Positions 46,815 through 64,000 of a stretch of DNA of 64,000 bases are shown piece by piece; position 1 is the first letter of the stretch; the number at the start of each line of letters is the position of its first letter. The stretch is taken from positions 154,401-218,400 of the IMG/VR virus record IMGVR_UViG_3300032285_004054. The stretch is one strand, 5' to 3'. The notes beneath the pieces were generated by a model that worked only from the letters and a program-made list of their open reading frames with translations, searched no databases and was not told where the DNA came from. The position numbers were made by a program, and so were the translations under genes.

Positions 46815-46986
46815 ACTTGTAGTTATTAATGTTGTTGTTGTTTGACATACGCCTCAGCCATCCATCCTGGGTAGTTGATTGTATGTGGTTTAGAAGAAGA
46901 GAAGGCTTCCTCTCTACGGAGTACCCGAAGATATTAAAGAAAGCTTCTAGAGGGTTCTTAATGAATGTCTTGATCTTATTCTTCAT
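46792..46986 (-). CDS. Hypothetical early protein
   Basis: MKNKIK start 6 nt after the -10 of TTGCCG-17-CATAAT. Confidence 0.6.
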   Translation of the reverse strand: MKNKIKTFIKNPLEAFFNIFGYSVERKPSLLLNHIQSTTQDGWLRRMSNNNNINNYKYELYYNL

Positions 46987-47026
46987 ACGAGTATTATGAA
47001 TGCTTTGGTTGGAACCGGCAACTACT

Positions 47027-47155
47027 TTATCGATCAAACGATTTAAATGATTGGCGGTTATAGTTCTTCTTATTCTTAAAGGCCTTCTGACCCGGGGCCC
47101 AATGCCGCCGGGTCTTAATCTCCTTTAGAGAGATGGTAAATGCTTTCGTCTTCAT
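47027..47155 (-). CDS. 42-aa basic peptide
   Basis: MKTKAFTISLKEIKTRRHWAPGQKAFKNKKNYNRQSFKSFDR; own promoter TTGCAG-17-TACTAT. Confidence 0.6.
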   Translation of the reverse strand: MKTKAFTISLKEIKTRRHWAPGQKAFKNKKNYNRQSFKSFDR

Positions 47156-47196
47156 ACTACTAATAGTAGAAGCTTATAGAGGCACCTGCAAGTATC

Positions 47197-47361
47197 TTAT
47201 AGAGCCTCTACCGCTCTCTTCATACTATCTATCTCCATGACGACGTCGGAGTAGGCTACTACTAGCTCTTGGATCTGCATATCCTTCTGATAGATTTGAT
47301 CCTTGAGGACGGCTATGAGCTTCTCCATCTCTTCGATCTTGTTTTGTAGGTCTGTTGTCAT
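47197..47361 (-). CDS. Small coiled-coil protein
   Basis: MTTDLQNKIEEMEKLIAVLKDQ... (54 aa); ATGA overlap with the upstream gene. Confidence 0.6.
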   Translation of the reverse strand: MTTDLQNKIEEMEKLIAVLKDQIYQKDMQIQELVVAYSDVVMEIDSMKRAVEAL

Positions 47362-47648
47362 TTTGTTGTAGGTGGTTCTTGGCCGGGATTACCATCCGTC
47401 CTCCAGGTACTATAGATGCCTTCATTGAGGGCGTCGATATTGGCGTAGTTGTGGATCAGATCGTAGTCATGCTTGAACTGTAGCGTACCCCAAACCAGAA
47501 CCAGAGCTACCCAGAGGGCTAGGATCAATGGCCAGATACGAAGGTAGAGCCTATCTACAAACCTTCTTAGACGCCTCAGTTGTACTTCGATCTCAACTGA
47601 GATAGGATACCAATATGTCCATTTGAGCTGTTGGGTCTTGGAGAACAT
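47358..47648 (-). CDS. Membrane protein
   Basis: TM segment IWPLILALWVALVLVWG. Confidence 0.55.
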   Translation of the reverse strand: MFSKTQQLKWTYWYPISVEIEVQLRRLRRFVDRLYLRIWPLILALWVALVLVWGTLQFKHDYDLIHNYANIDALNEGIYSTWRTDGNPGQEPPTTK

Positions 47649-47809
47649 AATCCTTTTAATTCATCATTGTGTTCTGGGTAATGCATACCCTATAAAGCTT
47701 CTCCATGGCGGCCAGGTACTCCTCATCGACTCCCATGAGCCTGGCCGCCATTTGTCGCATGCTATTCATCTCTTCTTCAGAGATGGAGTCTAAAGCGTTC
47801 TCCATTATC

Positions 47810-48007
47810 TTATTCGGTTACAATCTCGTAGGTAAGGGACTGGATAGCAAACCCATAGGCGTCGGCGATGGCGTCGGCCAGATCCTCTTCGAGGTTGCAG
47901 CTATCAGGGAACTCAAACTCCAGATCGACTGGAAGGTCACAAAGGTCCTCTTCATTATCGACGACCCAATAGATGTCGGTTACTTTGATCTTGTTCAGTA
48001 GTTCCAT
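47810..48007 (-). CDS. Acidic hypothetical early protein
   Basis: 65 aa, tightly packed. Confidence 0.6.
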   Translation of the reverse strand: MELLNKIKVTDIYWVVDNEEDLCDLPVDLEFEFPDSCNLEEDLADAIADAYGFAIQSLTYEIVTE

Positions 48008-48011
48008 AGTC

Positions 48012-48203
48012 TTAGATTCCGTAGGAGGTTAATACGAGGTAGAAATGATCGGGGTCGAGAACGTCATTGGCGTCATCGGTAGATACTTCGGCGTGATTGA
48101 TTGAGCAGAAGTCATCACGATCAGGATCATAGACGGTGACTGTGTCTTCAAGACGCTCTTTAGGAAGCTTCTTAAGCTCGTTGAGGAGTTGTTTGTAGGT
48201 CAT
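48012..48203 (-). CDS. Hypothetical early protein
   Basis: 63 aa. Confidence 0.6.
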   Translation of the reverse strand: MTYKQLLNELKKLPKERLEDTVTVYDPDRDDFCSINHAEVSTDDANDVLDPDHFYLVLTSYGI

Positions 48204-48208
48204 AAGGG

Positions 48209-48457
48209 TTAGGCGGTTACTTGTTTGTTCTTTAGTTGTTCGATCTCGGCTTTAGAGCTGCTATACCCATCATTGATAGCCTCCTGAAGGGTACGTCCGT
48301 AGTTGAAGTATCCGCTGCGATCCATCTCCAGGTATGTTTGAATGGATCCGAGGGTGAAGGCGTATCTGTATTCCTTATTACCTCTGAGTGTCTCAAGCTC
48401 CAGAATCAGATCTACGAGCTCCTTGACGGTTCTATCTACTGTGTTCTTATTTTTCAT
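48209..48457 (-). CDS. Hypothetical early protein
   Basis: MKNK start; promoter TTGTAG-17-TATACT-6-ATG. Confidence 0.65.
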   Translation of the reverse strand: MKNKNTVDRTVKELVDLILELETLRGNKEYRYAFTLGSIQTYLEMDRSGYFNYGRTLQEAINDGYSSSKAEIEQLKNKQVTA

Positions 48458-48473
48458 ACGATCAGTATAAGGG

Positions 48474-48674
48474 CTAGAGGTCGGAACTACAAGCTTCTTC
48501 TGCTGGCAACCCTAGAACAATCTCGTTATACTTGCTATGGAATACCTCCTGGATCTGATCTACTAGATTGAACATAATATAGGCCTTATCATTAGCCCCG
48601 CTACTATATTCATTCTCAAGATCTTTGAGGTAGTCGGAGATGAATGCGATGAATTCTTCGTTCTTATCTTTCAT
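48474..48674 (-). CDS. Hypothetical early protein
   Basis: TTGAGG-17-CATAAT-6-ATG. Confidence 0.65.
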   Translation of the reverse strand: MKDKNEEFIAFISDYLKDLENEYSSGANDKAYIMFNLVDQIQEVFHSKYNEIVLGLPAEEACSSDL

Positions 48675-48705
48675 ATAATGATTATGATCGGGTTGGAAGG
48701 AAACC

Positions 48706-48903
48706 TCAAGCCAAGAATTTGCCGAATGTCTCCATGCTCAGGTAGTATCGCCTCTGAACGGCCTCAGGCACCCTCCAGAAGTCAGAATCAGGTCCATCGC
48801 ACTTATCATACTCTTTCATCGCTTTCTTGGCTTCATTCATAGCTTCGAAGAAGTCTCGAGCCTTTAAGACGGCTTCCATGTCGTACTTGATCTTATTTTT
48901 CAT
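48706..48903 (-). CDS. Hypothetical early protein
   Basis: TTGACC-17-TATACT-6-ATG. Confidence 0.65.
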   Translation of the reverse strand: MKNKIKYDMEAVLKARDFFEAMNEAKKAMKEYDKCDGPDSDFWRVPEAVQRRYYLSMETFGKFLA

Positions 48904-48921
48904 ACGATCAGTATATAGGGT

Positions 48922-49113
48922 TCAGTCCTGAAGGTCAATGATAGAATCTGTAATTCCTTCCATACGTTCCTGTTGGGAATCCTCGACAGCTCCATAGAAG
49001 TACTCCTCATAATGGGCTTCTACTTCGGCTTTGGTAATATCAATGCCTTGATCCTTTAAAGCATCAATAACGTCTTGAATTTCAGAGTCAGCGATTTCAA
49101 TCTCAATCTTCAT
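48922..49113 (-). CDS. Acidic hypothetical early protein
   Basis: 63 aa. Confidence 0.6.
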   Translation of the reverse strand: MKIEIEIADSEIQDVIDALKDQGIDITKAEVEAHYEEYFYGAVEDSQQERMEGITDSIIDLQD

Positions 49114-49117
49114 ATGT

Positions 49118-49267
49118 TTATTCAGCGGTTAGGAATTTGATGTTGATATAACGGCGTAGACCTCTTGGTTTATTCTTCTCTGACATCATCGCCAGTCCTC
49201 CGACGATTGAACGAATGATCCAGATCTTACCCTGGTCCTCTATGTGCATTCCTTTTCTTATTTTCAT
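49118..49267 (-). CDS. Small basic early protein
   Basis: MKIRKGMHIEDQGKIWIIRS (49 aa); TTGCAG-17-TATACT-6-ATG. Confidence 0.6.
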   Translation of the reverse strand: MKIRKGMHIEDQGKIWIIRSIVGGLAMMSEKNKPRGLRRYINIKFLTAE

Positions 49268-49367
49268 ACATTCAGTATAAGGGAATTGAAAAGGAACTGC
49301 AAGCCTGGAAGAGTTGAAAAATAAGAAACGTCTCTATCCAGGCCTGCAGCAACCCTTCCCAAAAGTC

Positions 49368-49745
49368 TCAGTACCTAGGCACCACGATGGTGGGCTGTGG
49401 GGCGGTAAAATACGCTGGGGAATAATAAGCAGGGTTAGCATACGTCGGTACGTATCCTCCACATCCATAGGCTGGTACCGGGACGGGGGCAGCATATGCT
49501 GGGGCGGCCAGAGCTCCGGCGACGCCTAAACCGAAGAGCGTCCAACCTAGGCCATTAGGGATGCCAGTTCCACACCAGCCACCTCCTCCCCCATAGCCAC
49601 ATCCCCCGCGGTAGTATCCTCCATTACCGCAACCCCCGCCCCATCCTCCACCACCGCGATAGCATCCCCCATTGCCGTTATAATAGGCTTGGGATGTACT
49701 AACGAGAGCTGTAATAAGGAGTAGGGATAGAATGATCTTTTTCAT
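49368..49745 (-). CDS. Exported Gly/Cys/Tyr-rich protein
   Basis: Signal peptide MKKIILSLLLITALVSTSQA, GGC repeats, hydrophobic helix, Pro/Tyr tail. Confidence 0.65.
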   Translation of the reverse strand: MKKIILSLLLITALVSTSQAYYNGNGGCYRGGGGWGGGCGNGGYYRGGCGYGGGGGWCGTGIPNGLGWTLFGLGVAGALAAPAYAAPVPVPAYGCGGYVPTYANPAYYSPAYFTAPQPTIVVPRY

Positions 49746-49746
49746 A

Positions 49747-49938
49747 TTATTGATTGTAGTTAGAATTGGCTGATTGTGCAAGCTCCTCATAGTGTTCAAT
49801 TACAAAGAGGTATTCATCTTTGGTTAGACCGGCGACGATTCGGGCCTGGGGATCGAGCATATTGTATCGACCGCCAGCTCGGACCTTCTCATAGGCGAGC
49901 CAGTCGTTGATTTGATCTTTGGTAAAGTCCATTGTCAT
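49747..49938 (-). CDS. Hypothetical early protein
   Basis: Likely start MTMDFTKD. Confidence 0.55.
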   Translation of the reverse strand: MTMDFTKDQINDWLAYEKVRAGGRYNMLDPQARIVAGLTKDEYLFVIEHYEELAQSANSNYNQ

Positions 49939-49942
49939 AGTC

Positions 49943-50170
49943 TTAGGCAATGCGTAACATAATGGTACCTTCTTCATCGAGGATCGAGCGCCATTCAAAG
50001 CCCTCGGCCTTCAACTTAGCAATCATCCGGCCGGCTGGTGGGTGGCTATTGTTCAGACGGAAGATCGTTCCGATTGCTGACGAACGCCAGGGATAGGTGG
50101 TCGTATTAAAAGGACGACCTGGCTTACGCTTACCTCGAACATTGATGGACTTGATTTTATTGTGCTTCAT
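49943..50170 (-). CDS. Basic protein (AT-hook-like RKPGRP)
   Basis: 75 aa. Confidence 0.55.
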   Translation of the reverse strand: MKHNKIKSINVRGKRKPGRPFNTTTYPWRSSAIGTIFRLNNSHPPAGRMIAKLKAEGFEWRSILDEEGTIMLRIA

Positions 50171-50238
50171 TGTATTGGATTGTATTTGGGTTTAAAAAGT
50201 GGGAGACCCCAGGGCTCGCTGGGATCTCCCTATGATTC

Positions 50239-50571
50239 TTACTTAGCCTTCCCCTCAACCGGCATAGGAGCCTTAGCCTTAGGAGCGGCCTTCTTCTTAG
50301 CCGTCTGGATCTCCTCCTTCAGAGCCTCGACAACGGTCTCTACCGTCTTCTGAGCAGTCTTCTTAACAGCGCCCTTCCCGGTAAAGGTACGCAGGAGGTT
50401 CTCCAAGGAGCCGTACTTCTCGATCTTCTTCTTGAGGTTGGATCCGAAGCAGGTGAACGCGTTACCGGTTACCGTGCACTCGATGTAGTTCGTCGGAAGA
50501 ACTCCGAACTGGTCGAAGTAACCGAGCTGATAGGCGATGACGTCGTCGTTGATGATGTTGTTGTTTTTCAT
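50239..50571 (-). CDS. Basic protein with CxxTG motif and histone-like tail
   Basis: Start MKNNNII after an A/C-rich leader; weakly similar to the N-terminal domain of 29629-30240. Confidence 0.6.
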   Translation of the reverse strand: MKNNNIINDDVIAYQLGYFDQFGVLPTNYIECTVTGNAFTCFGSNLKKKIEKYGSLENLLRTFTGKGAVKKTAQKTVETVVEALKEEIQTAKKKAAPKAKAPMPVEGKAK

Positions 50572-50651
50572 TGTTGGGTTTGTTTTTGGGTTTTGGTTGT
50601 TACTGCTGTACTGATTGTACTTCTTCATTGTGGCTCCGATCCTTCGGAACC

Positions 50652-50861
50652 TCAAGCTTTTTCATCCAGGAATTCCTGAACCTGTTCTTCCAGGATAGGA
50701 TCCTGAATAGGATTCCCGTCTGTATCCCGGATCTCAAAATCAATGATCTTTCCCTTGGCGTTGGAATACTCATTGACAACGATGGATCCGTAGCGTGGGA
50801 CCTCATCGATAAAATAGGTGTCGAGAATAGTCTCGGTGTGTTCGTGGGTTGTAATTGTCAT
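50652..50861 (-). CDS. Acidic hypothetical early protein
   Basis: TTGAGG-17-CATAAT-6-ATG. Confidence 0.65.
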   Translation of the reverse strand: MTITTHEHTETILDTYFIDEVPRYGSIVVNEYSNAKGKIIDFEIRDTDGNPIQDPILEEQVQEFLDEKA

Positions 50862-50898
50862 ACGAGCATTATGGATGGATTGGAAGGAAACCTCAAGC

Positions 50899-51174
50899 TT
50901 AAACCAATCCTACAAGAGCCTTAAAGGTCTGATCGGATGGACGCTCGGTAGCAAACCAGGTATGGGTAGTATAATTGCCAATATCTACACCGAGATCTTG
51001 AAGGTCTTCACCAATAATAACATCCATAAGCTTCCATCCTTTAACGGCCTGATCTTTAAAAGCCTCTCGGATGATTACTTGCTTGTAAGGATTAATCTGA
51101 TACATCTCATAATCATCAATGAAAAGGATGTATTTAGCTGTCGATGAGTTTAGGGCGATGTTCTTATTTTTCAT
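50899..51174 (-). CDS. Hypothetical early protein
   Basis: TTGAGT-17-CATACT-6-ATG. Confidence 0.65.
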   Translation of the reverse strand: MKNKNIALNSSTAKYILFIDDYEMYQINPYKQVIIREAFKDQAVKGWKLMDVIIGEDLQDLGVDIGNYTTHTWFATERPSDQTFKALVGLV

Positions 51175-51192
51175 AGATTCAGTATGTAGGGA

Positions 51193-51384
51193 TCAGAGAA
51201 GGAACTCAAGCTGTTTCTTCAGCTCCTGTGCCGTCTCTATATCAATGACGATGATTTGATTGCAGGAAAACCCCTTGAGGGTCAGCTCCAGGACCTCCTT
51301 ATGGCCTTCGTATGGGTTCTGGCCATGACGTACGGCTACGCCTTGGTAGATAGATCCGGTGATTGGTTCTTCTGTATTTTTCAT
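51193..51384 (-). CDS. Hypothetical early protein
   Basis: TTGCCT-17-CATAAT-7-ATG. Confidence 0.6.
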   Translation of the reverse strand: MKNTEEPITGSIYQGVAVRHGQNPYEGHKEVLELTLKGFSCNQIIVIDIETAQELKKQLEFLL

Positions 51385-51421
51385 AGATTGGATTATGGAT
51401 TGGAAGGAAAGAACAGGCAAG

Positions 51422-51691
51422 CTATTCCTTCTCCCAAAGATAAGCCCTTTCAGTCAGATCTTGGATGAAGCAGCTGAATTCGCCATTCATACAAGCATTC
51501 TCAACGGCCAAAGCAGCCTCTTCCAACGCTGGATCCTCAGTATAAAGGACATCGATGGCTTCTGTATACTCTGGCTTATCCATAAAACCTTTCAGTTCTT
51601 GGAGGGCCTTATAGACGCCAGAGGTAAGCTCTTCGTAGCGTCCGGCGATAGCGATGATGGCTTCAGGGTTCAGGGTGTTTTTATTTTTCAT
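51422..51691 (-). CDS. Hypothetical early protein
   Basis: TTGTCT-17-CATAAT-6-ATG. Confidence 0.65.
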   Translation of the reverse strand: MKNKNTLNPEAIIAIAGRYEELTSGVYKALQELKGFMDKPEYTEAIDVLYTEDPALEEAALAVENACMNGEFSCFIQDLTERAYLWEKE

Positions 51692-52056
51692 GCATTCATT
51701 ATGGCAGCAGAGGGAAGGAAAGACAAGGGAATCTTTTTTTATTTCCGGCTTGATGGTTCCAATAGGAGCCTATAGAATGAAAGGATAATAAAGAAGAGGT
51801 CGTTGAGCAGGGACCTAGGAGAAGAAAACAGCTCGAAGAGGGAGTAACATCCTGCCACGTTTGTTAGCACACCCTGCCCCTATATACTAACATCGTTGTT
51901 AAATCTTCCTAGAATAGGGTAACTAACTTCTCTGTTAGATGTTAGTAGAATTTCCTGCTTGCAACAATCAGTAAGTACCGGATAATGGAAATATAGTTCA
52001 GGAAATCTCGGATAGTTCAGTTGAACATTCCTAGAAGTAAGCACGGAAAGTACTAG

Positions 52057-52118
52057 AAAAAAACTGTTCTAAAAAAACCGTGAAAAAAACAGGGTAGAAA
52101 AAAACTGTGAAAAAAAAC
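52057..52118. repeat. Five tandem A7-8C tracts
   Basis: Tracts start at 52057, 52071, 52083, 52098, 52110. Confidence 0.8.
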
Positions 52119-52121
52119 GTG

Positions 52122-52195
52122 TGGCTACCCCTCATGGATTCGAACCATGACAAAGAGAGCCAAAATCTCTTGTGCTACCGTTACACTAAAGGGTA
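52122..52195 (-). tRNA. tRNA-Gln(UUG)
   Basis: U1-A72, loop TTTTGGC, CCA. Confidence 0.9.
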
Positions 52196-52199
52196 AGAA

Positions 52200-52274
52200 T
52201 GGCTCCCGAGGCTGGATTCGAACCAACAACATGCGAGTTAACAGCTCGCTGCTCTACCGTTGAGCTACTCGGGA
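52200..52274 (-). tRNA. tRNA-Asn(GUU)
   Basis: Loop CTGTTAA, G73, CCA. Confidence 0.93.
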
Positions 52275-52280
52275 ACAATT

Positions 52281-52363
52281 TGGGCAGAGAAGGACTCGAA
52301 CCTTCGAAGGCGAATGCCAAAGGATTTACAGTCCTCCCCGTTTGACCGCTTCGGTATCTACCC
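52281..52363 (-). tRNA. tRNA-Tyr(GUA), CCA not encoded
   Basis: Loop CTGTAAA, long variable arm. Confidence 0.92.
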
Positions 52364-52414
52364 GTATTGCTTATACAATTTATAATAGACATAGATATAG
52401 TCAAGAGAATAAAA

Positions 52415-52489
52415 TGGCATCCTCAAGGGGATTTGAACCCCTGCTAGGTCCGTGAAAGGGACCGGTGCTAACCGCTACACTATGAGGAC
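52415..52489 (-). tRNA. tRNA-Glu(UUC)
   Basis: Loop CTTTCAC, CCA. Confidence 0.92.
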
Positions 52490-52704
52490 ATAGATAGAGT
52501 ATTATATAGGCTCTATAAGAATAGGCAAGAGCTATTAAAGGAATCTAAGAGAAATTCCCCTTATTAGGAGGCTATAAGGACTGTTTATATGAGAAAAAAA
52601 TTAAAAAAATTCTTGAAAAATTGTAAGGACACACTAAGTGTTTTCTAAGTATTCGCAATTATTCTTCCATTCCCTAATCAATCTTTAATAATCTTTAATA
52701 CTCT

Positions 52705-52944
52705 CTATATAAGCTCTACCTTTGTTCTATGATTAAAAGTGACACATTGTCCTACTACAATTGGCCAGACACCTTCTGGAAGTACCGGAGGAACATCTAC
52801 TACGATCCTGGCAGCTTTATAGGCTGGGTTACGAGCTTCTGGCCAATAAGGACTGGCACATCTATAGACACCTCCATCATTGTTATGTTTGAACTGTTGG
52901 CCTTTCTTTAGCTCTCCAATTCTTACAATGTTCTTATTGTTCAT
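52705..52944 (-). CDS. Hypothetical early protein
   Basis: TTGAAT-17-TAAAAT-6-ATG. Confidence 0.65.
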   Translation of the reverse strand: MNNKNIVRIGELKKGQQFKHNNDGGVYRCASPYWPEARNPAYKAARIVVDVPPVLPEGVWPIVVGQCVTFNHRTKVELI

Positions 52945-52982
52945 AGATTCATTTTAAAATCTATCGGAGGAACATTCAAGCT

Positions 52983-53288
52983 TTAAATGATACCCAAGAG
53001 ACCTTCAAATGAGTCTTTTGTTTCCGGTGATAGATTCTTCATTATATTATATCTCTCTATCGCCTTTAATCCTTCTTCTTCTATATCTTTGAATATATTA
53101 ACCGATGTTGCCAGCCCCAGTAATGGCTTATATTTTGTTGGTACCTTTAAGAACGCTAGATATGATCTCTTTTTACCTTTTTCTAAAACAAATTGCCAGG
53201 TATTACCTTCATTATCTTTCATCTCATACCCTGGTTCCCTTCTCTTTCCTACTATCTTATACTCTACATCTGTAAATGTTAATGACAT
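52983..53288 (-). CDS. Tail-family member
   Basis: Ends RYNIMKNLSPETKDSFEGLLGII. Confidence 0.8.
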   Translation of the reverse strand: MSLTFTDVEYKIVGKRREPGYEMKDNEGNTWQFVLEKGKKRSYLAFLKVPTKYKPLLGLATSVNIFKDIEEEGLKAIERYNIMKNLSPETKDSFEGLLGII

Positions 53289-53291
53289 AAC

Positions 53292-53423: not shown

Positions 53424-53432
53424 ATACTCTAT

Positions 53433-53786
53433 TTATACAACATCAATAAAGCTACCGAACGTTTCTTTTGTATCATCGGACATATGCTTTTCTAATTCAA
53501 ATCTATTATATTCCTTTTTTACTAGATCTCTAATATACTTTTCTAGTTCCTTACGATCTGGAGATAATGTATCTTTTGATATCCCAGGGATCTTACTACT
53601 CAATGAATAGCCTATATCCTTATCAAATCCATCATTTGTCCCATAGATACCCATCTTCTCACCATTTATATAAACATCGGCTAGTACCGTCCATATCTTA
53701 GAACTAGTACTGGGACGAATCTTTACAGCAATATCCAATCCTGCAAAGCCTTCATTGAGTATACTCTCTACTAGATCCTGGAACAT
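53433..53786 (-). CDS. Tail-family member
   Basis: MFQDLVESILNEG ... MSDDTKETFGSFIDVV. Confidence 0.8.
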   Translation of the reverse strand: MFQDLVESILNEGFAGLDIAVKIRPSTSSKIWTVLADVYINGEKMGIYGTNDGFDKDIGYSLSSKIPGISKDTLSPDRKELEKYIRDLVKKEYNRFELEKHMSDDTKETFGSFIDVV

Positions 53787-54222: not shown

Positions 54223-54566
54223 CCGATCAGCTTCTCCAGTAGCATTCTACTGTTAACCTTAATATCACACTCCAAGGCGTCTCTAGATTCAATAGCCTTA
54301 AAGTACTCTTCGTCATTATCAATCAGTTCCTGACCTAACGTCTTCTTAACATCTGGATTGAGCTTTGATTTGATCAGTTCCAGGATTGGCTCCACATCTT
54401 TATCTGATAGATGGAGGGTAACTTCGGAGCCATCATATACGGAACCATAATTGAATTCCAGCTTTAGAGTAACCGGAGGACATGGACTATAACCAAATGG
54501 TTGACCAGTAAAGTCGGAGAAGTAACTTGCCTCCTCTATCTGTTCAGGAACGATTATCTTTTTCAT
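54219..54566 (-). CDS. Hypothetical protein
   Basis: 115 aa, coupled to the second queD. Confidence 0.55.
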   Translation of the reverse strand: MKKIIVPEQIEEASYFSDFTGQPFGYSPCPPVTLKLEFNYGSVYDGSEVTLHLSDKDVEPILELIKSKLNPDVKKTLGQELIDNDEEYFKAIESRDALECDIKVNSRMLLEKLIG

Positions 54567-55336: not shown

Positions 55337-55612
55337 TCACAGAATTCCCACAAAATCCTGGAAATTCTCCTGTGTTTTCTCTGATAATTCCTTAATAATA
55401 CTATAGTTTTTCGGGAACATTTTACAGATTTCCGCTACTTGATCCCTGTCTGTTGAACCATCCTGGTAACGAACATCTATCTTACACATTAAACTACTAG
55501 GGAATATAGTTTGCATTTCCGTTACTTGTACGGTCATAATTCTTCCGTCATAGTAATAATCAAACCAGTCCCCAGGCTTGAGATTACTAACAAATGATAG
55601 GTTATCGAACAT
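55337..55612 (-). CDS. Tail-family member under an early-type promoter
   Basis: Ends LSEKTQENFQDFVGIL; TTGAAC-17-TAGTAT-6-ATG. Confidence 0.7.
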   Translation of the reverse strand: MFDNLSFVSNLKPGDWFDYYYDGRIMTVQVTEMQTIFPSSLMCKIDVRYQDGSTDRDQVAEICKMFPKNYSIIKELSEKTQENFQDFVGIL

Positions 55613-55667
55613 GAATATATACTAGAGGAATTTGATTTATAGTTCAACTATAAAATAAATATAACCG

Positions 55668-55991
55668 ATGAACTTCGAGGATCTTGTTGTAGAGGCTATA
55701 CATAACAAATATGTTAAGTTTGATATAGAGATTCTTAGTGGTCCTTACCCTGGTGAACATTACGGGTGGTTGGAAGAGTGTCAAGTATACAAAGCAAGAA
55801 TTTTTGATAATACAAACGTTCAATTAATCTATCAACCGAGTAGGGATTATGTTGGTGCGAAGAATTTTGACGTCTGGTGGTTTGGTCGGGAGGCTGGATT
55901 TGACGAACAGGCCAAAGCAGCTATAATAAAATACAATATGTCAAAGGAAGCTAAGGGATCATTTGGTGACTTCTTAGACGCCATATCATGA
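55668..55991 (+). CDS. Tail-family member
   Basis: MNFEDLVVEA ... MSKEAKGSFGDFLDAIS. Confidence 0.8.
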   Translation: MNFEDLVVEAIHNKYVKFDIEILSGPYPGEHYGWLEECQVYKARIFDNTNVQLIYQPSRDYVGAKNFDVWWFGREAGFDEQAKAAIIKYNMSKEAKGSFGDFLDAIS

Positions 55992-56314
55992 GCTTAAACG
56001 TAGAAATAATTCCCAGAAGAACGTACGATACAAGTTACGGATTCAAGCGTTACAGTTGTAAGATATCCGGATCTGTAGACGGAATTGATATCAATAATGC
56101 ACTACCTTGGCAGAAAGGTGTCTTCCAAGTAGAAATATGGCATAATGGCTCCTGTCGACTACCTGCTTTAGATCAAGTTCCAGAGATTCCCTACCCTAAA
56201 ACCTATCACAAGTTTTGTGCTGAAGTTAAGAAAGCTATTGAAGACCAGGAGCTAATATCCTCACTATCGCCGGAAACAGGCGATGCTTTCAAAGACCTTA
56301 TTAGTATAACTTAG
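55988..56314 (+). CDS. Tail-family member
   Basis: Ends LSPETGDAFKDLISIT. Confidence 0.78.
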   Translation: MSLNVEIIPRRTYDTSYGFKRYSCKISGSVDGIDINNALPWQKGVFQVEIWHNGSCRLPALDQVPEIPYPKTYHKFCAEVKKAIEDQELISSLSPETGDAFKDLISIT

Positions 56315-56953: not shown

Positions 56954-58160
56954 TCAGGGTACATAATCTACCTCCTCGACACGTCTTACCTCAAGTCCAA
57001 AATCAACTCTAATAGGCTTCCCTACTACATGATTGCTTTCATCTATTGCTCTTACAATAATACAACAAGGATCCTTTAGGTCCATCTGAACCATTCCAGC
57101 ATCCATAATATAAACAGATTCGTTTTCTAAACCACAATCAGGAGCATGATCTACTCTTACTGCTTTCATGATGATCTAGGAAGGTATACTGCACTAATGT
57201 TATCAGACTCTATACCAAGAGATCTTACTTCCTGGTACTCTCCATCGTACCAATGTTTGTCTTGTTTTGGATAAAAGCTAAGGCCAGTAACAATTTCAAT
57301 TTTCTTTACTTCGTCATATCCAGTTTCATATCCATCCACGAGAACAATTTGCTCAGGATCATACTTTTGTAGTTGCTCTAATAGTTCTTTAACTTTCATA
57401 TTTTCCAGGTTGTTTTGCCTCCAAAGTGACCACAGGTTTCACAAGAGCCTTTATCAGACTCGTAATCATCATATTGAAGACAATAGAGAAGATCATCTAC
57501 AGATGTTTGGTTCTTCTTAATAGCTTCCTTTAGTTGACCAAGTAAATAATCTATCAGTTCTTCGTTCTGTTCAAGATACTCTCCTTCTTTTAGCCACTCT
57601 CCATTTACACACCATGCTGGACCAAAGCAGGACTTTTCATCTTTAATGATTATATATTTGTGTTCGTCAGACATTAGAGTGATGGCTTATTTGTTCCAAT
57701 ATCTTCAGCTACATAAGGACATTGCATCTTAATCCATTTGCTAGAAGGATATTCTTTAAAAGATACATAACCATCTGTACCCCAGGGATAACCTTTTGAA
57801 TAGTAGGTCTGCTGAACCTCTCCATTAATGTTTAGTCTTTGAATCTTATAGTAATGTACCTGAGGTCGATCGAAATAAGCACATCCTGTAAAAAACAAAA
57901 TAGGTACAAGTGGTATAGCTATTATAAAAGCTATTACTTTTACCTCAAACCAGAATGTTTTAGATTTGTTAGTCATACTACTCAACCTTCTCACCAGGAA
58001 TCTTTCCAATGTCTAAGAAGACAGAATGAGGATGAGTATCTTTGTAGGTGACTAGATCAATACCAAACACATTAAAGACATTATTGGACTTACTAGCACA
58101 ATAAACATCTGCATCAGGATCTTGAAGCTCGAGAGCATGAATGAGTTCTTTTACTGTCAT
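56954..58160 (-). other. Coupled operon of five small hypothetical ORFs (56954-57169, 57166-57399, 57396-57674, 57674-57976 with lipobox FTGC, 57978-58160)
   Basis: ATGA overlaps; upstream TTGACT..TAGAAT promoter. Confidence 0.6.
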
Positions 58161-58197
58161 ATGATAATTCTATATGATTATCTTTTTGAGTCAAGCA

Positions 58198-58620: not shown

Positions 58621-58736
58621 TTTGTAAAAAGGTTTCTAATCAATTTATAGCTCACATAGGATGTAATTACAATAAAAAAGATAAACAGAAATATATCTGG
58701 TTCAGTTATATACATATCCTATATGCTCTAGAAGGA

Positions 58737-61243
58737 CTAGTCAAGAGAATCTTCAGCAACTTCTGGTTTAAAGTCTTTAGGAATGTTATCATCTAACCAC
58801 TCTTTTGGTCTCTCTGTAAACTTTCCTTCTTCTCCTAACAGACTAAAATAAGCACATTCCAATCCAATAAGCATACCATACATATACTCATTGCAGTTGT
58901 AGTTGCCATTCTGCTTTTGGATGTCAATAAGACCTTTAATCTTTTCAGCTGCTTCTTTCATAATGTTATAGGTAAAGTAGTCTTTGTACCATCATAAGCT
59001 ACATGGTATACTGGAGTTGCTTCTCTAATAACTCTAACACCACCACAGACATTATCTTCATCTCTAATTGGAACAACTTCACAGTCTGGTCCTTTATATG
59101 GAACATAAGCAATGTCTTTTCCAAAATGAGGATCAATGTTTGGAGGTACTGGAACAGTTGGAAGAGTTCTCCAAATGTTTTGATTCTTTATGATCTCTTC
59201 ATTCTGCTTAACAATCATTTCAAGCAGTTCAATAATCTTTTCTTCTTTCTTCATATTAATTTCTAGGATCAGTCCAACTCTGAATAGGATAAGGTGTATT
59301 GAGAATCATTTCAACAAAAGCTTTTCCTTTTTCAGTAAGTGTAAGTTGATCAGCATCAGAATCATGTTCAGCAAATCTCACTAGGATATGATCTTTTAGT
59401 AATTGACTAGCAGCATCATATTCTGCCTTATTCCATCTGTTGATCATATACCTTGGCATATAGTGAGCTTTGAGTAGAATTTCAATCTTTAATGGACTGT
59501 GTAGGTTTCTGCTAATCATATTTTTACCAGGCTGGAAGGTTTTTACTAATGTTCCATCCTTTTGCTTCATATTTCTTTTCAAGTCTTTCTAGGATAGGCT
59601 TTAGAAAGTCATTGAGTTCTTTGCTTGTACAATTCTCTTCACAGCTCAGATAATAGAACATACCCTTATAATATGTCTCCCAATGATATGCTTTACTTCT
59701 ACTCAGTTGACCAATCATTGTAGATGGTAGACCTGTAGCTGTATAGAAAATTTCTTTCTTCTTCATACTATGATGCTAATCTATTTCCTGGTTTGTATCC
59801 AGCTGCTTTTAGAACTTCATCTCTAGCTTCCAATAACTTCTCAGATGGTAAAAAATAAGGCTCAACACAGCTTAGAAGCTTATCAATAGCTCTGCCCAAA
59901 GATTCTTTCCTTTCTCCATAAATGTGTCTGTGGAGTTCTTTAGCCATTCTATCTTTAATAAGGTCTTCATACATTCCTATGCTAGACTCTGACCATTGGC
60001 TATCTATATCTTGGTAATACTCTGTAAAGAATTCAAGTTTAGCTCTATGTCTAATCCTGCCACTATTGGATATCTCCTTAGTGTATTGGATCATATCTGT
60101 AAAGTCTTTGTCATTCATATTATTGATCTTTATATCTTAAACCTTATCATCATAAGCTTCATCATATCCATTTCTCCAAGCCTCTTCTTTAATCTCTTCA
60201 ATCCTTTCATTAAAGACATTCAAAAGATAATCAATAAAAAGCTTTGCTGACTCTTCTACATCTCCTTCAAACTTTAATTTGTCTTCATTAAAGTCAAACT
60301 TACCAACTTCTTTATGTTCTTTGTTAAAGAATGTTACAATGTGATTAGGTTCAAAAAGAGATAGAGCATTATCAGTACAAATAACTTTATCCCAATTAGA
60401 TGTATCAATCTCTAGTTCTTTCATATTAGTTTACTGTTACCTTTTGATACCCTATCTCCTCTATAACAACTCCACCCTTTAAGAGTCTGTGTTTATATCT
60501 TTGATTAGAGAATGATTTTAGCATAGCCCAAGCCCCTTCTGCAAAGGACTTCTGCATATCACAGAATCCCATCACTCTACTCCACTTATCAACAGGAGGT
60601 TCCATATAGAACTGAATATCATAGTATGATTTTTTCATTTCAAGAAGTATAGCACAGTAAAGTAAAGTGTCCAGACAAAAAAAGCACAGATGAAGCAAAA
60701 GATTCCAAGTAATGCTAAACCAAAGTCTCCAAAAAGAGAACCATCACTTGCATCATTTAGGTTTTTACCACCAAAGATAGCAAGAGCAATGGATAGGATA
60801 ATAGGAATCCAAATAGATGAGAAAGAGATTGTGAGTGCTAAAATCATAAATTAAATGCCTCATTAACTCTCTCTTCAAACTTCTTAACAGCTGGGAGGAT
60901 TACTTCTTGTACAACTTGTGATTCTGGATGAACATCTTTAGCTAACATACTCCCAAATTCCATTGCAGCAAATACTACTTTATTTCTAATAACAGAAAGC
61001 TCATCATGTTCTTCTAGTCCAGTTAGAACCTCTTTTAGGAAATTTTTAATCTCTTCTCTTTTCATATTAATTAAAATAATTCTGTGCTCCAAACAAACTA
61101 TATACCCAATGATAATATGGTGTAAAAAACTTTACAAGCCAAAAACATATACCAAAGATAAATGGAACAACTAAAGCAATTATTACAAAGATTGCAATTG
61201 CATGTATTGCTACTAATAGATTTTCAATTGTCTTTGTGCTCAT
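58737..61243 (-). other. Run of small hypothetical ORFs (58737-58961, 58958-59254, 59256-59582, 59524-59766, 59768-60118, 60137-60424, 60426-60638, 60635-60847 membrane, 60844-61065, 61067-61243 membrane)
   Basis: Tightly packed, co-oriented; no family recognised. Confidence 0.6.
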
Positions 61244-61417
61244 ATTAATGTTTAAAGAAAGTATATGTCAAATAGCCCCAAGTTACAAGCATAAAAAATA
61301 CAAATACTGAAAAGCCTATAATCAGAGTCTTATGAATCTCTCTAACAAGCTGAAGAACTGATATATTAAAATCAGATTGTTTTGTATTAAATTCAGCTTG
61401 TGATGATTTGAATGTAT

Positions 61418-61603
61418 CTAGTTTAATTTTGCAATTTTTTCACAAATATTGTTGTATTTGTTACAAAGCTTACTTTCTGCCCTATCAAGCTTATTCAACT
61501 CTCTCTTTATAAGAGTATATTCTTTTTTAACACCCTTGAGCTGTTTATCAATACAACCAAGAGTAAATTTTAGCTTTTTGATTTGTTCTTTCTTATTTTT
61601 CAT
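61418..61603 (-). CDS. Coiled-coil early protein
   Basis: TTGAAG-17-TATACT-6-ATG; MKNK start. Confidence 0.6.
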   Translation of the reverse strand: MKNKKEQIKKLKFTLGCIDKQLKGVKKEYTLIKRELNKLDRAESKLCNKYNNICEKIAKLN

Positions 61604-61624
61604 ACATTCAGTATATAGGCTTCT

Positions 61625-61810
61625 TTAGGGCACTTCAAGCCTTTTCTTCTTCTCAATAGTTGTGTAAATGAACATCTCTTTTGGTATCCAAAATTGATAC
61701 CATCTCTTAGTTACTGGTGCTCTTTGTATAGCTTGAAAATCATATACATTATAAGTTGAAACCCTAGGCATCAACCATTCATCTTTCTTTAGTCCTATAG
61801 AGTCATTCAT
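61625..61810 (-). CDS. Hypothetical protein
   Basis: Likely start MNDSIG. Confidence 0.5.
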   Translation of the reverse strand: MNDSIGLKKDEWLMPRVSTYNVYDFQAIQRAPVTKRWYQFWIPKEMFIYTTIEKKKRLEVP

Positions 61811-61811
61811 A

Positions 61812-62498
61812 TTAAATCTCCTCAAGTTCTTTAGGTTTAATAGGTGCTGTAACCTTTATACTATATCCATCACTAATGAAGTTACTGCAAATAATCTCTG
61901 ACTTCTCTCCTCTTGGCAAATTAGGCATAGCTTTATCAATGCTCTTCCAAATATCACTCCAATCAGCTGTGTCCTTATTCTCAATAGCATTAGCAATCTT
62001 CTTCCAAAGTTTCTTAGGAACTTTAAAGAGCTTATACTCAATTGCTCCTTGAACTACAGGCAATGGAACACCAGTGTGACTAAAAGGCTTATCAAACCTT
62101 CTAGTGTAATCAGCCCATCCATCATTGTCCTTAAAAGCTTTGTACCTTCCTAGAACCTTATAAATCTCATAGGCCATTGTAGCATCTCCTACCTTCTCCT
62201 GGTTATAGATGCCATAGGATACATTAGGATTGTTCTCTAAATCTGTACCCTTGAACAGATACTTCCTAGCACAATTATGAATCTCTTGTTTATCTTCATA
62301 GGCTAATGAATATCCAAATGCTTCATCAAGGGCATAATCAATCTGACCAAGTTTTAATCTCTGAAAAACTTCTAAAGACTTCAACAGAGTTGGAATGTGT
62401 CTCTCATCAAACTCAATAGTAACAGGCTGTCGAACTTTCTCTTTATAGTTCTTAGCAGCCTTCTTAAGATTCTTTTTAGCTTGTACTTTAGTGGTCAT
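61812..62498 (-). CDS. Hypothetical early protein
   Basis: 228 aa; TTGAGG-17-TATTAT promoter. Confidence 0.65.
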   Translation of the reverse strand: MTTKVQAKKNLKKAAKNYKEKVRQPVTIEFDERHIPTLLKSLEVFQRLKLGQIDYALDEAFGYSLAYEDKQEIHNCARKYLFKGTDLENNPNVSYGIYNQEKVGDATMAYEIYKVLGRYKAFKDNDGWADYTRRFDKPFSHTGVPLPVVQGAIEYKLFKVPKKLWKKIANAIENKDTADWSDIWKSIDKAMPNLPRGEKSEIICSNFISDGYSIKVTAPIKPKELEEI

Positions 62499-62532
62499 TG
62501 TGTCTTTATAATATATGGATCTTTAGGACACC

Positions 62533-63376
62533 TCAAGCTTCTTCTTTTGTATAATCCTCTTCAATGTTCTCATTGGTTTCCATATCCCACATCTCATCAA
62601 TGTTAATATCAAACCCATCACTTTGAAAAGCTCTATCTCTTGCAATGTCTTTAATGAGCTTATTAGCTTCATCAGTAATCTCTCCATCACTGAGACTATC
62701 ATCAACCTCCATCTCAGTCTCTACCCAGATCTTTACTTCAGCTGATACATAGATTGTTCTCATTTATTTCTCCTTTTTAACAGGTGTAATTTCACTCTGA
62801 ACAATATCTGGAAACTTTTTACCAAGCATTGGCTTTAGAATGTTTGGTATTCTGTCGAGCTTCTTCATCTCATCTCTCTCCTTAAGATACTTCAAACAGA
62901 TTTGAGGTACAAACCTACCAAGATCCTCTACTTCAGCATTCAAGTTAATATAATCAGAGACTTCATTCCACTGATTCATAATCTTTAGAGCTTCTTCTTT
63001 CCATTGTCTCAACTCATTATTTACATCTCTCAGTTCATTTATAATCCTCTCATCCTCTTGAGTTTTGACCCACAGAGCATCTCTTTCTAGCTGAACATCC
63101 TTTAGAGTCTTTGTCAATACAGACACAGACAACTCCAAATCAATATCATCATTCATAATCTTATTCTAAAATATGATTCTTAATCATCTCAAAAAGAGAA
63201 TCAATACTCTCTTTAACTGAGCCTTCAATCTTAATTGCTGTCTTTAAAACATTACCTTCAAAGCCTTTCATTGGATCATTAGGATCTTTAGGAACTGGCA
63301 AAGCACTATCTCCATCCCAATAAATGAGACTGATGAGATTGTTATTCCTATCAATTGATATTTTATAATTGTTCAT
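62533..63376 (-). other. Three-gene early operon (62533-62763, 62764-63156, 63161-63376)
   Basis: TTGACA-17-TAGACT-6-ATG at its head. Confidence 0.62.
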
Positions 63377-63480
63377 TATTACAGTCTATATGCTTTAGGA
63401 GAAGGTGTCAAGAAAAGAATTTTTACTAGAATCTATTGTTTTTACTGATGAGTAAAAATTCATGTTTTCAGCAAAAACAA

Positions 63481-63732
63481 TCAATAGCAGCAATCACACT
63501 TCTCAACAGTTGGATCAATATCTGCAATGACATTTCTAGCCTTTCTCAATGCTTGATCCAAATGATCCTTATTGATCTCATCCTTCTGTGCTACAATGAC
63601 TAGGTGCTTTAGAGCTTTCATGAGATCATCTCTTTCTAGTTTCAAAGCATCAAACTGTTCAACAAAACTCTTCATCTCTTGGACATCTTCTTTGATTTGT
63701 TTATGATCTTCTTTAATAAAATTGTGAATCAT
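63481..63732 (-). CDS. Coiled-coil early protein
   Basis: TTGAAT-17-TAGACT-6-ATG. Confidence 0.62.
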   Translation of the reverse strand: MIHNFIKEDHKQIKEDVQEMKSFVEQFDALKLERDDLMKALKHLVIVAQKDEINKDHLDQALRKARNVIADIDPTVEKCDCCY

Positions 63733-63741
63733 TTTTACAGT

Positions 63742-63942
63742 CTATAGAGATTCTAAGGACAATTCAAGCTTTTTAATTTTATCCCTTAACTCTTTATTGA
63801 CATCTTCTTGTTCATTAAGCATCCTCTCTAGTTCCCAGACTTTAGCTTCTAATGAATCTCTTTCTAGTTCTACTTTTTCTAGTCTGTCTTCAAACCACTC
63901 GAGTCTAAACTCTGGGTCATCATAGTCATAAGGGCAATTCAT
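63742..63942 (-). CDS. Coiled-coil early protein
   Basis: TTGACA-17-TAGAAT-6-ATG. Confidence 0.62.
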   Translation of the reverse strand: MNCPYDYDDPEFRLEWFEDRLEKVELERDSLEAKVWELERMLNEQEDVNKELRDKIKKLELSLESL

Positions 63943-64000
63943 TTTTACATTCTATATGCTTTAGGAGGAGGTGTCAATAAGATTCTTCACCACAGCATCA

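What the first reader, a model, noticed from the sequence alone, without database searches (positions are those of the whole stretch)
46986..63977. Early genes as self-contained leaderless cassettes with promoters overprinted on the previous gene's last codons
Seen: 14 promoters with exact -35/17/-10/6 nt/ATG geometry. The -35 is often inside the upstream stop or final codons (GCT TGA at 48706; KQLEFLL*, EEACSSDL*, IIDLQD*, KRLEVP*, KKLELSLESL*). Many proteins begin ATGAAAAATAA(G/A) (MKNK). Established: transcription starts ~7 nt after the -10, so the A of ATG would be +1, and leaderless mRNAs load 70S ribosomes without an SD. Inference: a systematic leaderless programme with an A-rich downstream enhancer. 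The shared promoter-MKNK block could also act as a recombination repeat for gene exchange.
Basis: partly seen in the sequence, partly recalled or inferred. Interest (0 to 1): 0.7.

Follow-up and report, generated by a model that had tools for sequence, protein, structure and literature searches.

The report
Promoter-fused early gene cassettes in phage
An uncultured freshwater T4-like phage fills its early region with small genes whose start codon sits exactly where the preceding promoter should start transcription; related phages share this portable promoter-plus-first-codons module, which predicts, but does not prove, messenger RNAs with no leader.

Summary
The genes lie on the minus strand. 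Exactly 14 sites in the window fit TTGNNN-17-NANNNT-6-ATG. Eight more lie across the record's ends, so the early region is one 24.8 kb stretch with 22 sites. Every other spacer or distance gives 0-7 sites there, and the opposite strand gives 0-5. Lengths are conserved but sequences are not: 18 different 6-nt discriminators here, and 63 different spacers among 65 sites in five other phage contigs. In 13 modules the upstream gene's stop codon lies inside the promoter. The ATGAAAAAT head is under nucleotide-level selection: codon 2 is AAA 64 times and AAG 3 times, although gene bodies prefer AAG. Unrelated proteins carry the same head. Comparison of relatives, with weaker support from metagenome contigs, shows genes swapped at the promoter or ATG boundary, as with PeSL cassettes of RB49/phi1. 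There is no Shine-Dalgarno sequence and no regular stem-loop. Syn9, S-CAM7, HTVC008M and C48C1 lack the geometry. Leaderless transcription is the best-supported reading, but no RNA data exist. Shine-Dalgarno sequences are rare genome-wide, and the cassettes lack terminators. Verdict: a new variant of known kinds, of moderate to high interest.

The parts
63940..63977 (-). Class-A module: TTGACA-17-TAGAAT-6-ATG, fused to gene 63742-63942 (66 aa)
   Evidence: The upstream ORF runs across the record's ends and stops 12 nt before the -35.
63730..63767 (-). Module TTGAAT-17-TAGACT-6-ATG, fused to gene 63481-63732 (83 aa)
   Evidence: The upstream stop TAG is the first three bases of the -10 (KKLELSLESL*).
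63374..63411 (-). Class-A module TTGACA-17-TAGACT-6-ATG, fused to gene 63161-63376 (71 aa)
   Evidence: The module and its gene are 94% identical to L005:6374-6647.
63154..63192 (-). Module with an 18-nt spacer (TTGAGA-18-TAGAAT-6-ATG), written entirely over the last codons (..NHILE*) of gene 63376; fused to gene 62764-63156 (130 aa)
   Evidence: In L005 the same upstream gene and -10/discriminator are followed by a different gene, with the junction at the ATG.
62496..62536 (-). Module TTGAGG-17-TATTAT-9-ATG (predicted 2-3 nt leader), fused to gene 61812-62498 (228 aa)
   Evidence: The stop of the upstream gene (GCT TGA) lies in the -35. The distance is 9, 9 and 7 nt at the orthologous promoters of this phage, L005 and L004.
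61601..61638 (-). Module TTGAAG-17-TATACT-6-ATG, fused to gene 61418-61603 (61 aa, MKNKK)
   Evidence: (best PWM score, 32.2). The upstream stop lies in the spacer (KRLEVP*).
58716..58744 (-). Class-A-like promoter TTGACT-17-TAGGAT with no ATG at 6 nt. An ATG abuts the -10, and the next long gene starts at 58620. This is an exception to the geometry.
58158..58194 (-). Module with a 16-nt spacer, TTGACT-16-TAGAAT-6-ATG, fused to gene 57978-58160 (60 aa)
55610..55647 (-). Generic sigma-70-like site TTGAAC-17-TAGTAT-6-ATG, fused to gene 55337-55612 (91 aa). It matches the family profile only weakly.
   Evidence: absent from the PWM hits
52942..52979 (-). Module TTGAAT-17-TAAAAT-6-ATG, fused to gene 52705-52944 (79 aa, MNNKN)
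   Evidence: A homologue in L145 (66% identity) is also promoter-fused.
52501..52528 (-). Same promoter family (TTGCCT-16-TATAAT) placed 11 nt before tRNA-Glu; presumably drives the tRNA cluster 52122-52489
51689..51726 (-). Class-B module TTGTCT-17-CATAAT-6-ATG, fused to gene 51422-51691 (89 aa, MKNKN)
51382..51420 (-). Class-B module TTGCCT-17-CATAAT-7-ATG, fused to gene 51193-51384 (63 aa, MKNTE)
51172..51209 (-). Class-B module TTGAGT-17-CATACT-6-ATG, fused to gene 50899-51174 (91 aa, MKNKN)
   Evidence: The upstream stop lies in the spacer (KQLEFLL*).
50859..50896 (-). Class-B module TTGAGG-17-CATAAT-6-ATG, fused to gene 50652-50861 (69 aa)
50626..50655 (-). Degenerate module: -35 TTGAGG and a 17-nt spacer, but the -10-like CACAAT overlaps the ATG of gene 50239-50628. 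Probably a decayed copy.
49265..49302 (-). Class-B module TTGCAG-17-TATACT-6-ATG, fused to gene 49118-49267 (49 aa)
   Evidence: In other freshwater runs only the 44 nt 49261-49304 match, with unrelated flanks.
48901..48938 (-). Class-B module TTGACC-17-TATACT-6-ATG, fused to gene 48706-48903 (65 aa, MKNKI)
   Evidence: The upstream stop lies in the spacer (IIDLQD*). Only 48893-48938 is matched in other runs.
48672..48709 (-). Class-B module TTGAGG-17-CATAAT-6-ATG, fused to gene 48474-48674 (66 aa, MKDKN)
   Evidence: The upstream stop GCT TGA lies inside the -35.
48455..48492 (-). Class-B module TTGTAG-17-TATACT-6-ATG, fused to gene 48209-48457 (82 aa, MKNKN)
   Evidence: The upstream stop lies in the spacer (EEACSSDL*).
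47153..47191 (-). Weaker module TTGCAG-17-TACTAT-7-ATG, fused to gene 47027-47155 (42 aa)
46984..47021 (-). Class-B module TTGCCG-17-CATAAT-6-ATG, fused to gene 46792-46986 (64 aa, MKNKI)
46405..46444 (-). Weak module TTGCCG-16-TAATAT-9-ATG, fused to gene 46249-46407 (52 aa)
50201..50230 (-). The one strong intrinsic-terminator-like hairpin in the early region (12 pairs followed by a T run)

Best explanation
The window is the last 64 kb of a 218.4-kb uncultured freshwater T4-like phage. Its 24.8-kb early, hyperplastic region wraps across the record's ends. It is tiled with about 30 sigma-70-type promoters, each fused directly to the start codon of a small ORFan. The conserved unit is about 44 nt: GC, a -35 TTGAnn, exactly 17 nt, a -10 (TAGAAT, TATACT or CATAAT), exactly 6 nt ending in a pyrimidine, then ATG followed by AAAAAT... 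Host RNA polymerase would start at the A of the ATG, the 7th base after the -10. The first gene of each unit would then be made from a leaderless mRNA, and its unstructured A-rich 5' end would favour direct ribosome loading. Because the module fills the whole gap between genes, it is often written over the previous gene's last codons and stop. The module also serves as the conserved linker at which genes are swapped between phages, in the manner of PeSL elements. What is shown: the geometry, its statistics, its conservation across phages, nucleotide-level selection on the head, and mosaic gene order with junctions at the module. What is inferred: promoter activity, early timing, the transcription start position, leaderless translation, and recombination at the module rather than selection for junctions at gene borders.
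For: Geometry. There are 22 sites at spacer 17 / distance 6, against 0-7 in all other cells. The relative L005 has 18 at the same cell. Five other phage contigs have 65, against 9 or fewer elsewhere. Length is conserved but sequence is not: 18 distinct discriminators among 22 sites, and 25 distinct discriminators and 63 distinct spacers among 65 sites. The base before the A of ATG is a pyrimidine in 19 of 22 sites. A -10 box 6-8 nt from gene starts is the accepted sequence signature of leaderless transcription (PMC6028130; PMC12340547). The determinants of leaderless translation reported in PMC8459731 are met: an AUG start, no leader, and an accessible 5' end. Median unfolding energy is 0 kcal/mol for the fused genes, against 1.3-1.4 for other genes (p = 0.002 and 0.0002). 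The head is selected as nucleotides. Codon 2 is AAA 64 times and AAG 3 times, against 31:69 in the bodies of the same genes (p = 1e-25). Codon 3 is AAT 63 times and AAC never (p = 5e-15). In the 46.4-52 kb block, MKN heads occur on 7 of 10 fused genes and on 0 of 11 internal genes. Portability. One class-A promoter precedes at least 35 different N-termini in 22 contigs. Seventy-five fused genes fall into 48 BLAST clusters. The same gene occurs with and without the module, and the same upstream gene plus -10 is followed by different genes, with the junction at the ATG. Metagenome contigs join at the -35 edge and at ATG heads. In other runs only the roughly 44-nt module matches.
Against: No RNA data exist, so the start site is inferred from E. 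coli-type rules for an unknown host. Shine-Dalgarno motifs are rare throughout this genome (about 10% of genes). The host therefore initiates without them anyway, and leaderless loading is not required to explain translation. There are no terminators between cassettes, so downstream genes also sit inside read-through transcripts. Orthologues lacking the module must be translated internally. About a quarter of the modules have distances of 7-19 nt. The accessibility and codon tests treat sites as independent although some share ancestry. Junctions at gene borders could also arise from selection on random recombinants.
Confidence: 0.65

Rival explanations
1. The promoters are real, but the tight spacing reflects genome compaction only. 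Proteins are made mainly from long read-through transcripts by Shine-Dalgarno-independent internal initiation. The 6-nt distance is just the shortest that keeps the ATG in the transcript.
For: Shine-Dalgarno motifs are rare genome-wide. There are no terminators between cassettes. The same genes work without an adjacent promoter in relatives. Late TATAAATA motifs also crowd the ATG, but at variable distances of 5-13 nt.
Against: Compaction alone predicts a floor at 6 nt with a tail. It does not predict 22 sites at 6 nt against 7 at 7 nt and 5 or fewer at any other distance, nor 65 against 9 or fewer in five other phages. It does not explain the pyrimidine before the A, or the synonymous-codon constraint on the head that is specific to fused genes.
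Confidence: 0.17
2. The module is a factor-dependent promoter or operator. The conserved GC before the -35 and the TCC/CCTAAAG motif in the spacer would be the binding site of a phage regulator, either an activator or an early shut-off repressor. The promoter class would then be defined by that factor, not by leaderless expression.
For: Positions outside the two hexamers are conserved across phages: GC at -38/-37 and (T)TCC at about -29 to -26. GCTTGA resembles the T4 MotA box TGCTTtA at the sequence level (own knowledge).
Against: The hexamers are near-consensus sigma-70 with a 17-nt spacer, so no factor is needed. GCTTGA ends 19 nt before the -10, not the 12 +/- 1 nt of MotA boxes. No AsiA and no sigma region 4 homologue was found, although the AsiA search had no positive control. 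This reading is compatible with the same start site, so it is an addition more than a rival.
Confidence: 0.1
3. The module is a repeat spread and homogenised by recombination, a selfish or neutral linker. Its fixed geometry would be inherited rather than selected.
For: Near-identical class-A copies occur 8 or more times in one 20-kb locus and in 22 contigs. Of the 40 copies with the ATG at 6 nt, 27 share one discriminator.
Against: Class-B modules have 63 different spacers and 25 different discriminators among 65 sites, yet keep 17 + 6 nt. The modules are strictly co-oriented with the genes and always in frame with ORFs of 30 aa or more.
Confidence: 0.05

Closest known systems
PeSL (promoter-early stem-loop) cassettes of T4-type coliphages RB49 and phi1 (Arbiol et al. 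2010, PMC2839356)
   Same: Dozens of repeated sigma-70-like early promoters lie in hyperplastic regions, each just upstream of an ORFan and overlapping the end of the previous gene. They are proposed as linkers for modular shuffling, and comparison of relatives shows insertion, deletion and replacement at the elements.
   Different: By definition PeSLs contain a stem-loop terminator and end in a Shine-Dalgarno sequence before the start codon. Here there is no Shine-Dalgarno sequence. A stable hairpin occurs in only 4 of 20 modules. The -10 lies exactly 6 nt from the ATG, and the conserved unit runs into the first 2-5 codons. Mini-circles were not tested.
-10 box adjacent to the ORF as the signature of leaderless genes (GeneMarkS-2 group C, PMC6028130; Deinococcus-Thermus, PMC12340547; mycobacteria, PMC4633059)
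   Same: A Pribnow-type -10 lies 6-8 nt upstream of an AUG, with no ribosome-binding site.
   Different: Those are cellular genomes of Actinobacteria and Deinococcota, often with a weak or absent -35. This is a low-GC T4-like phage with full -35/-10 promoters, and the feature is concentrated in the early-gene array. The host is unknown.
Thermus phage phiYS40 leaderless middle and late transcripts (as reviewed in PMC3594737)
   Same: A phage expression programme in which a whole temporal class of mRNAs lacks leaders.
   Different: In phiYS40 the class is middle/late, the host phylum is rich in leaderless genes, and the case is backed by mapped 5' ends. Here the early class is at issue, the phage is T4-like, and the inference rests on sequence only.
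Integron gene cassettes (the analogy drawn in PMC2839356)
   Same: Arrays of small, unrelated, exchangeable ORFs are bounded by a short conserved site.
   Different: There is no integrase or attC. Each cassette carries its own promoter instead of relying on one common promoter.

Membership tests
PeSL regulatory cassettes | Repeated sigma-70-consensus early promoter in the hyperplastic region, upstream of ORFans | tested here: met
   There are 22 strict sites and about 10 relaxed sites in 24.8 kb. Of the 20 early-region products scanned against Pfam or PHROGs, only QueD matched a family above its threshold; one more had two weak PHROG matches of unknown function.
PeSL regulatory cassettes | Adjacent stable stem-loop acting as a terminator or attenuator | tested here: not met
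   Terminator-like sites: 14 found, 11.0 +/- 4.4 expected. Only 4 of 20 modules fold better than shuffles (z below -2.8); the other 16 have z between -1.3 and +1.2.
PeSL regulatory cassettes | Shine-Dalgarno sequence between the promoter and the start codon | tested here: not met
   Only 6 nt separate the -10 from the ATG, and 0 of 22 sites have a Shine-Dalgarno tetramer.
PeSL regulatory cassettes | Recombination between copies causes gene insertion, deletion or replacement; mini-circles form | tested here: inconclusive
   Gene order is mosaic, with junctions at the -35 edge or the ATG, in relatives and in metagenome contigs. Circular intermediates cannot be tested here.
Leaderless mRNA genes | The primary transcript's 5' end coincides with the start codon (or the leader is under about 5 nt) | not testable with these tools
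   No RNA run was listed. The encoding contigs found are DNA assemblies.
Leaderless mRNA genes | -10 element 6-8 nt upstream of the start codon | tested here: met
   In the PWM scan, made without ATG information, the distance is 6 nt in 22 sites, 7 nt in 2 and 9 nt in about 4.
Leaderless mRNA genes | AUG start and an unstructured 5' end (PMC8459731) | tested here: met
   ATG occurs 22 times at that position; the next triplet occurs 5 times. Median unfolding energy is 0 against 1.3-1.4 kcal/mol.
T4 MotA/AsiA-dependent middle promoters | MotA box centred at -30, 12 +/- 1 nt from the -10, replacing the -35; phage encodes MotA and AsiA | tested here: not met
   GCTTGA ends 19 nt before the -10, and a good -35 is present. 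The AsiA family was not found, but that search had no positive control.

The most novel reading that the evidence does not exclude
A whole clade of uncultured freshwater T4-like phages may run on a universal, portable expression adaptor. The adaptor is a roughly 44-nt promoter + AUG + AAAAAU head that turns any captured ORF into an immediately expressed, leaderless early gene and also serves as the crossover site for exchanging such genes. Late promoters also abut start codons, and the phage encodes ribosomal protein bS21. On this reading the phage's entire programme is adapted to, or reshapes, ribosomes that initiate without a leader or a Shine-Dalgarno sequence.
Probability: 0.3. Interest if true: 0.8.

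Novelty: new variant of a known kind. Interest (0 to 1): 0.62.

Why it matters
If the start sites are as predicted, this would be the first T4-like phage group whose early programme is systematically leaderless. It would also give a defined 44-nt element that couples transcription start, translation start and gene exchange. That would provide a sequence-only marker for early genes in a widespread group of uncultured freshwater phages. It would give a natural experiment on what makes a leaderless mRNA efficient: more than 85 independent heads with measurable codon constraint. It would extend the PeSL model of modular shuffling beyond coliphages. It would also offer a compact promoter-and-start part to test in bacteria that use Shine-Dalgarno sequences rarely.

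Tried and rejected
A megablast of the early region against cultured phages found nothing. The DNA polymerase is only 31-34% identical to Phage C48C1, HTVC008M and cyanophages.

No RNA-seq run was listed, and the exact-protein look-up returned only DNA assemblies. The start site therefore could not be checked.

Two over-strict patterns missed the sites. One found a single site in the record, and one found nothing in viral contigs.

Blastp shows the MKNK proteins are not paralogues, so the paralogy explanation for the shared head is rejected.

Host inference failed:
- There is no psbA, WhiB or sigma region 4.
- The GMP reductase is about 50% identical to Comamonadaceae and Bacilli alike.
- The bS21 search returned only the query itself.

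The Syn9 transcriptome paper is not held. Literature searches found no description of leaderless early genes in T4-like phages.

The argument that fused genes lack a Shine-Dalgarno sequence while others have one was dropped, because such sequences are rare everywhere in this genome.

The short-sided joints between class-B modules mostly reflect similarity between modules. I do not count them as recombination events.

Full report
**What the sequence is.** The window is positions 154401-218400 of a 218,400-bp IMG/VR virus record. The same sequence is held by freshwater metagenomes. It encodes T4-type replication and recombination proteins: gp43-like polymerase, gp41-like helicase, an SbcC-like (gp46-like) nuclease subunit and UvsX. 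The polymerase is only 31-34% identical to Phage C48C1, Pelagibacter phage HTVC008M and Synechococcus myoviruses. A psbA search found nothing, and neither did searches for WhiB, AsiA or sigma region 4. The host is unknown.

The genes in the finding lie on the minus strand. An ORF runs in frame across the junction of the record's two ends. The early region is therefore one continuous stretch of about 24.8 kb: record positions 7100 down to 1, then 218400 down to 200700.

**Checking the observation.** A strict search for TTGNNN-N17-NANNNT-N6-ATG over the whole record finds 28 minus-strand sites. The plus strand has 14 scattered sites.

To avoid circularity I varied both lengths. In the early region, spacer 17 with distance 6 gives 22 sites. 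Every other combination (spacer 15-19, distance 0-14) gives 0-7, and the opposite strand gives 0-5. ATG is by far the commonest triplet at that position.

A profile built only from the -35 to -10 part, scanned without ATG information, recovers about 30 promoters in the early region. The distance to the first ORF-opening ATG is 6 nt in 22 sites, 7 nt in 2, 9 nt in about 4 and 19 nt in one. One copy sits 11 nt before tRNA-Glu.

The upstream gene's stop codon lies within the promoter in 13 modules and 3-12 nt before the -35 in 10 more. JGI's independent gene calls use the same starts.

**Two sub-classes.**
- Class A occupies 58-64 kb and the start of the record. It has TTGACA or TTGAAG, a spacer containing CCTAAAG, and TAGAAT or TAGACT.
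- Class B occupies 46.4-52 kb, a block of 45% GC against 34% elsewhere. It has GC-TTGAnn-(G)TTCC..., CATAAT or TATACT, a discriminator ending in GT, and the head ATG AAA AAT AAG AAC.

**Is the geometry selected or merely copied?**
- The 22 sites use 18 different discriminators.
- In a relative whose orthologous 228-aa protein is 67% identical (L005), the same strand carries 18 sites at 17/6 and background elsewhere. Its whole record has 24 strict-pattern sites on one strand, against 2-3 for the reversed-pattern control.
- The class-A promoter occurs in 22 IMG/VR contigs at 58 distinct sites. Forty have the ATG at 6 nt, and these are followed by at least 35 different N-termini.
- Class-B modules form arrays of 12-16 per 7-15 kb in five further large phage contigs. 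Pooled, these give 65 sites at 17/6 against 9 or fewer in any other cell, with 63 different spacers and 25 different discriminators.

Lengths are thus held constant while sequences drift. That is what selection on promoter and start-site geometry predicts. Cultured relatives (Syn9, S-CAM7, HTVC008M, C48C1) show only control-level counts.

**The leaderless reading.** With 6 nt after the -10, the A of the ATG is the 7th base downstream, which is the modal sigma-70 start position (established knowledge). The base before it is a pyrimidine in 19 of 22 sites.

A -10 box 6-8 nt from gene starts is the accepted sequence signature of leaderless transcription (PMC6028130; PMC12340547). The reported determinants of leaderless translation are an AUG start, zero leader and an accessible 5' end (PMC8459731), and all are met. 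Unfolding energy of the first 16 nt has a median of 0 kcal/mol in the fused genes, against 1.3-1.4 in other genes (p = 0.002 and 0.0002).

None of this replaces RNA data, and no RNA run was listed.

**The A-rich head.** The head is not explained by paralogy. The window's MKNK proteins show no blastp similarity to each other. Seventy-five fused genes from six contigs, one of them a near-identical copy of this window, fall into 48 clusters.

The head is constrained as nucleotides. Among 85 fused genes:
- Codon 2 is AAA 64 times and AAG 3 times, although the bodies of the same genes use AAG 69% of the time (p = 1e-25).
- Codon 3 is AAT 63 times and AAC never (p = 5e-15).
- Codon 5 is AAC 32 times and AAT twice (p = 2e-8).

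In the class-B block, MKN heads occur on 7 of 10 fused genes and on none of 11 internal genes (exact test p about 0.001). Whether the signal acts on ribosome loading, on early elongation or on promoter escape cannot be decided from sequence.

- Shine-Dalgarno tetramers occur upstream of only about 10% of this phage's genes. Their absence here is unremarkable, and the host evidently initiates without them.
- Terminator-like sites are not enriched, and only 4 of 20 modules contain a stable hairpin. The cassettes are therefore not transcriptionally insulated.
- Orthologous genes occur with the module in one phage and without it in another.
- About a quarter of the modules have 7-19 nt before the ATG.

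**Gene exchange.**
- Homology blocks between this phage and L005 begin at, or within a few bases of, start codons or the -35, and their order differs.
- Gene 63376 with its overprinted -10 and discriminator is followed by gene 63156 here, but by the head of gene 63732 in L005. The junction is exactly at the ATG.
- Metagenome contigs show a join of 62537 to 61646, both at -35 edges, with 8 shared bases. They also show 63986 joined to 58753, replacements bounded by 63414-63422 and 63941, and a 60420-to-61063 join between two TAATATGAAA heads. Contig-level joints in metagenomes are weak evidence, because some may come from related phages or from repeats.
- A clean 229-bp indel of gene 62763, with junctions at gene borders rather than at a module, shows cassette gain or loss.
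- In other freshwater runs only the roughly 44-nt class-B module matches, with unrelated flanks.
- Class-B genes have homologues of 29-78% identity, in shuffled order, in other phages.

This parallels PeSL-mediated shuffling (PMC2839356). Selection for junctions at gene borders remains an alternative.

**Comparison and verdict.** The closest known systems are the following.
- PeSL cassettes share the promoter arrays and the shuffling, but they carry a stem-loop and a Shine-Dalgarno sequence.
- Leaderless genes with an adjacent -10 occur in Actinobacteria and Deinococcota.
- Phage phiYS40 has leaderless middle and late mRNAs (PMC3594737).

My searches found no report of a T4-like phage with promoter-ATG fused early genes. 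I file it as a new variant of known kinds. The anatomy is firmly established, promoter function is very likely, leaderless expression is likely (about 0.65) but unproven, and a role as recombination linker is plausible.

Noticed in passing
window 36324-36536 (-): The phage encodes a ribosomal protein bS21 homologue (PF01165, 41.7 bits) next to the tRNA cluster at 35407-36314. It could bear on how phage mRNAs without a Shine-Dalgarno sequence or leader are translated.
   Followed up: partly
whole record; Pelagibacter phage HTVC008M (W03): The T4-type late motif TATAAATA ends 5-13 nt before the ATG at 14 of 15 gene-proximal sites. HTVC008M has 11 such sites against 1 in the control, mostly at 5 nt. 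Late genes may therefore also have almost no leader.
   Followed up: partly
window 51750-51778 (+) and 51790-52120: A high-scoring module-like promoter points the other way, on the plus strand, into a non-coding stretch of about 330 nt. On the minus strand, 52050-52120 holds five tandem T7-8 tracts just after tRNA-Gln.
   Followed up: no
window 46400-52000: The class-B cassette block is 45% GC against 34% for the rest of the window. Its genes have shuffled homologues in other phage contigs, which suggests the block was acquired from another lineage.
   Followed up: partly
window 53433-53786, 52983-53288, about 44608; record 7757-9572: Eight otherwise dissimilar proteins share only a C-terminal segment of about 20-35 residues. 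Its function is unknown.
   Followed up: no
L005:8704-10238: The L005 orthologue of the 228-aa gene (62498-61812) is interrupted by about 1.5 kb that is absent here. It may be a mobile insertion.
   Followed up: no
window 54563-55129 (-), 2141-3070 (-), 31909-32850 (-): There are QueD-like (PTPS), QueF-like and GMP-reductase-like genes. These hint at 7-deazaguanine metabolism or DNA modification.
   Followed up: no
window 50626-50655 (-): This is a decayed module. The -35 and spacer are intact, but the -10-like hexamer overlaps the ATG of gene 50628. The next gene downstream follows the only strong terminator hairpin (50201-50230).
   Followed up: no
window 55668-56314 (+): Two plus-strand ORFs (107 and 108 aa) interrupt the minus-strand early array. 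A near-consensus promoter-like site lies on the plus strand at 55900-55927.
   Followed up: no
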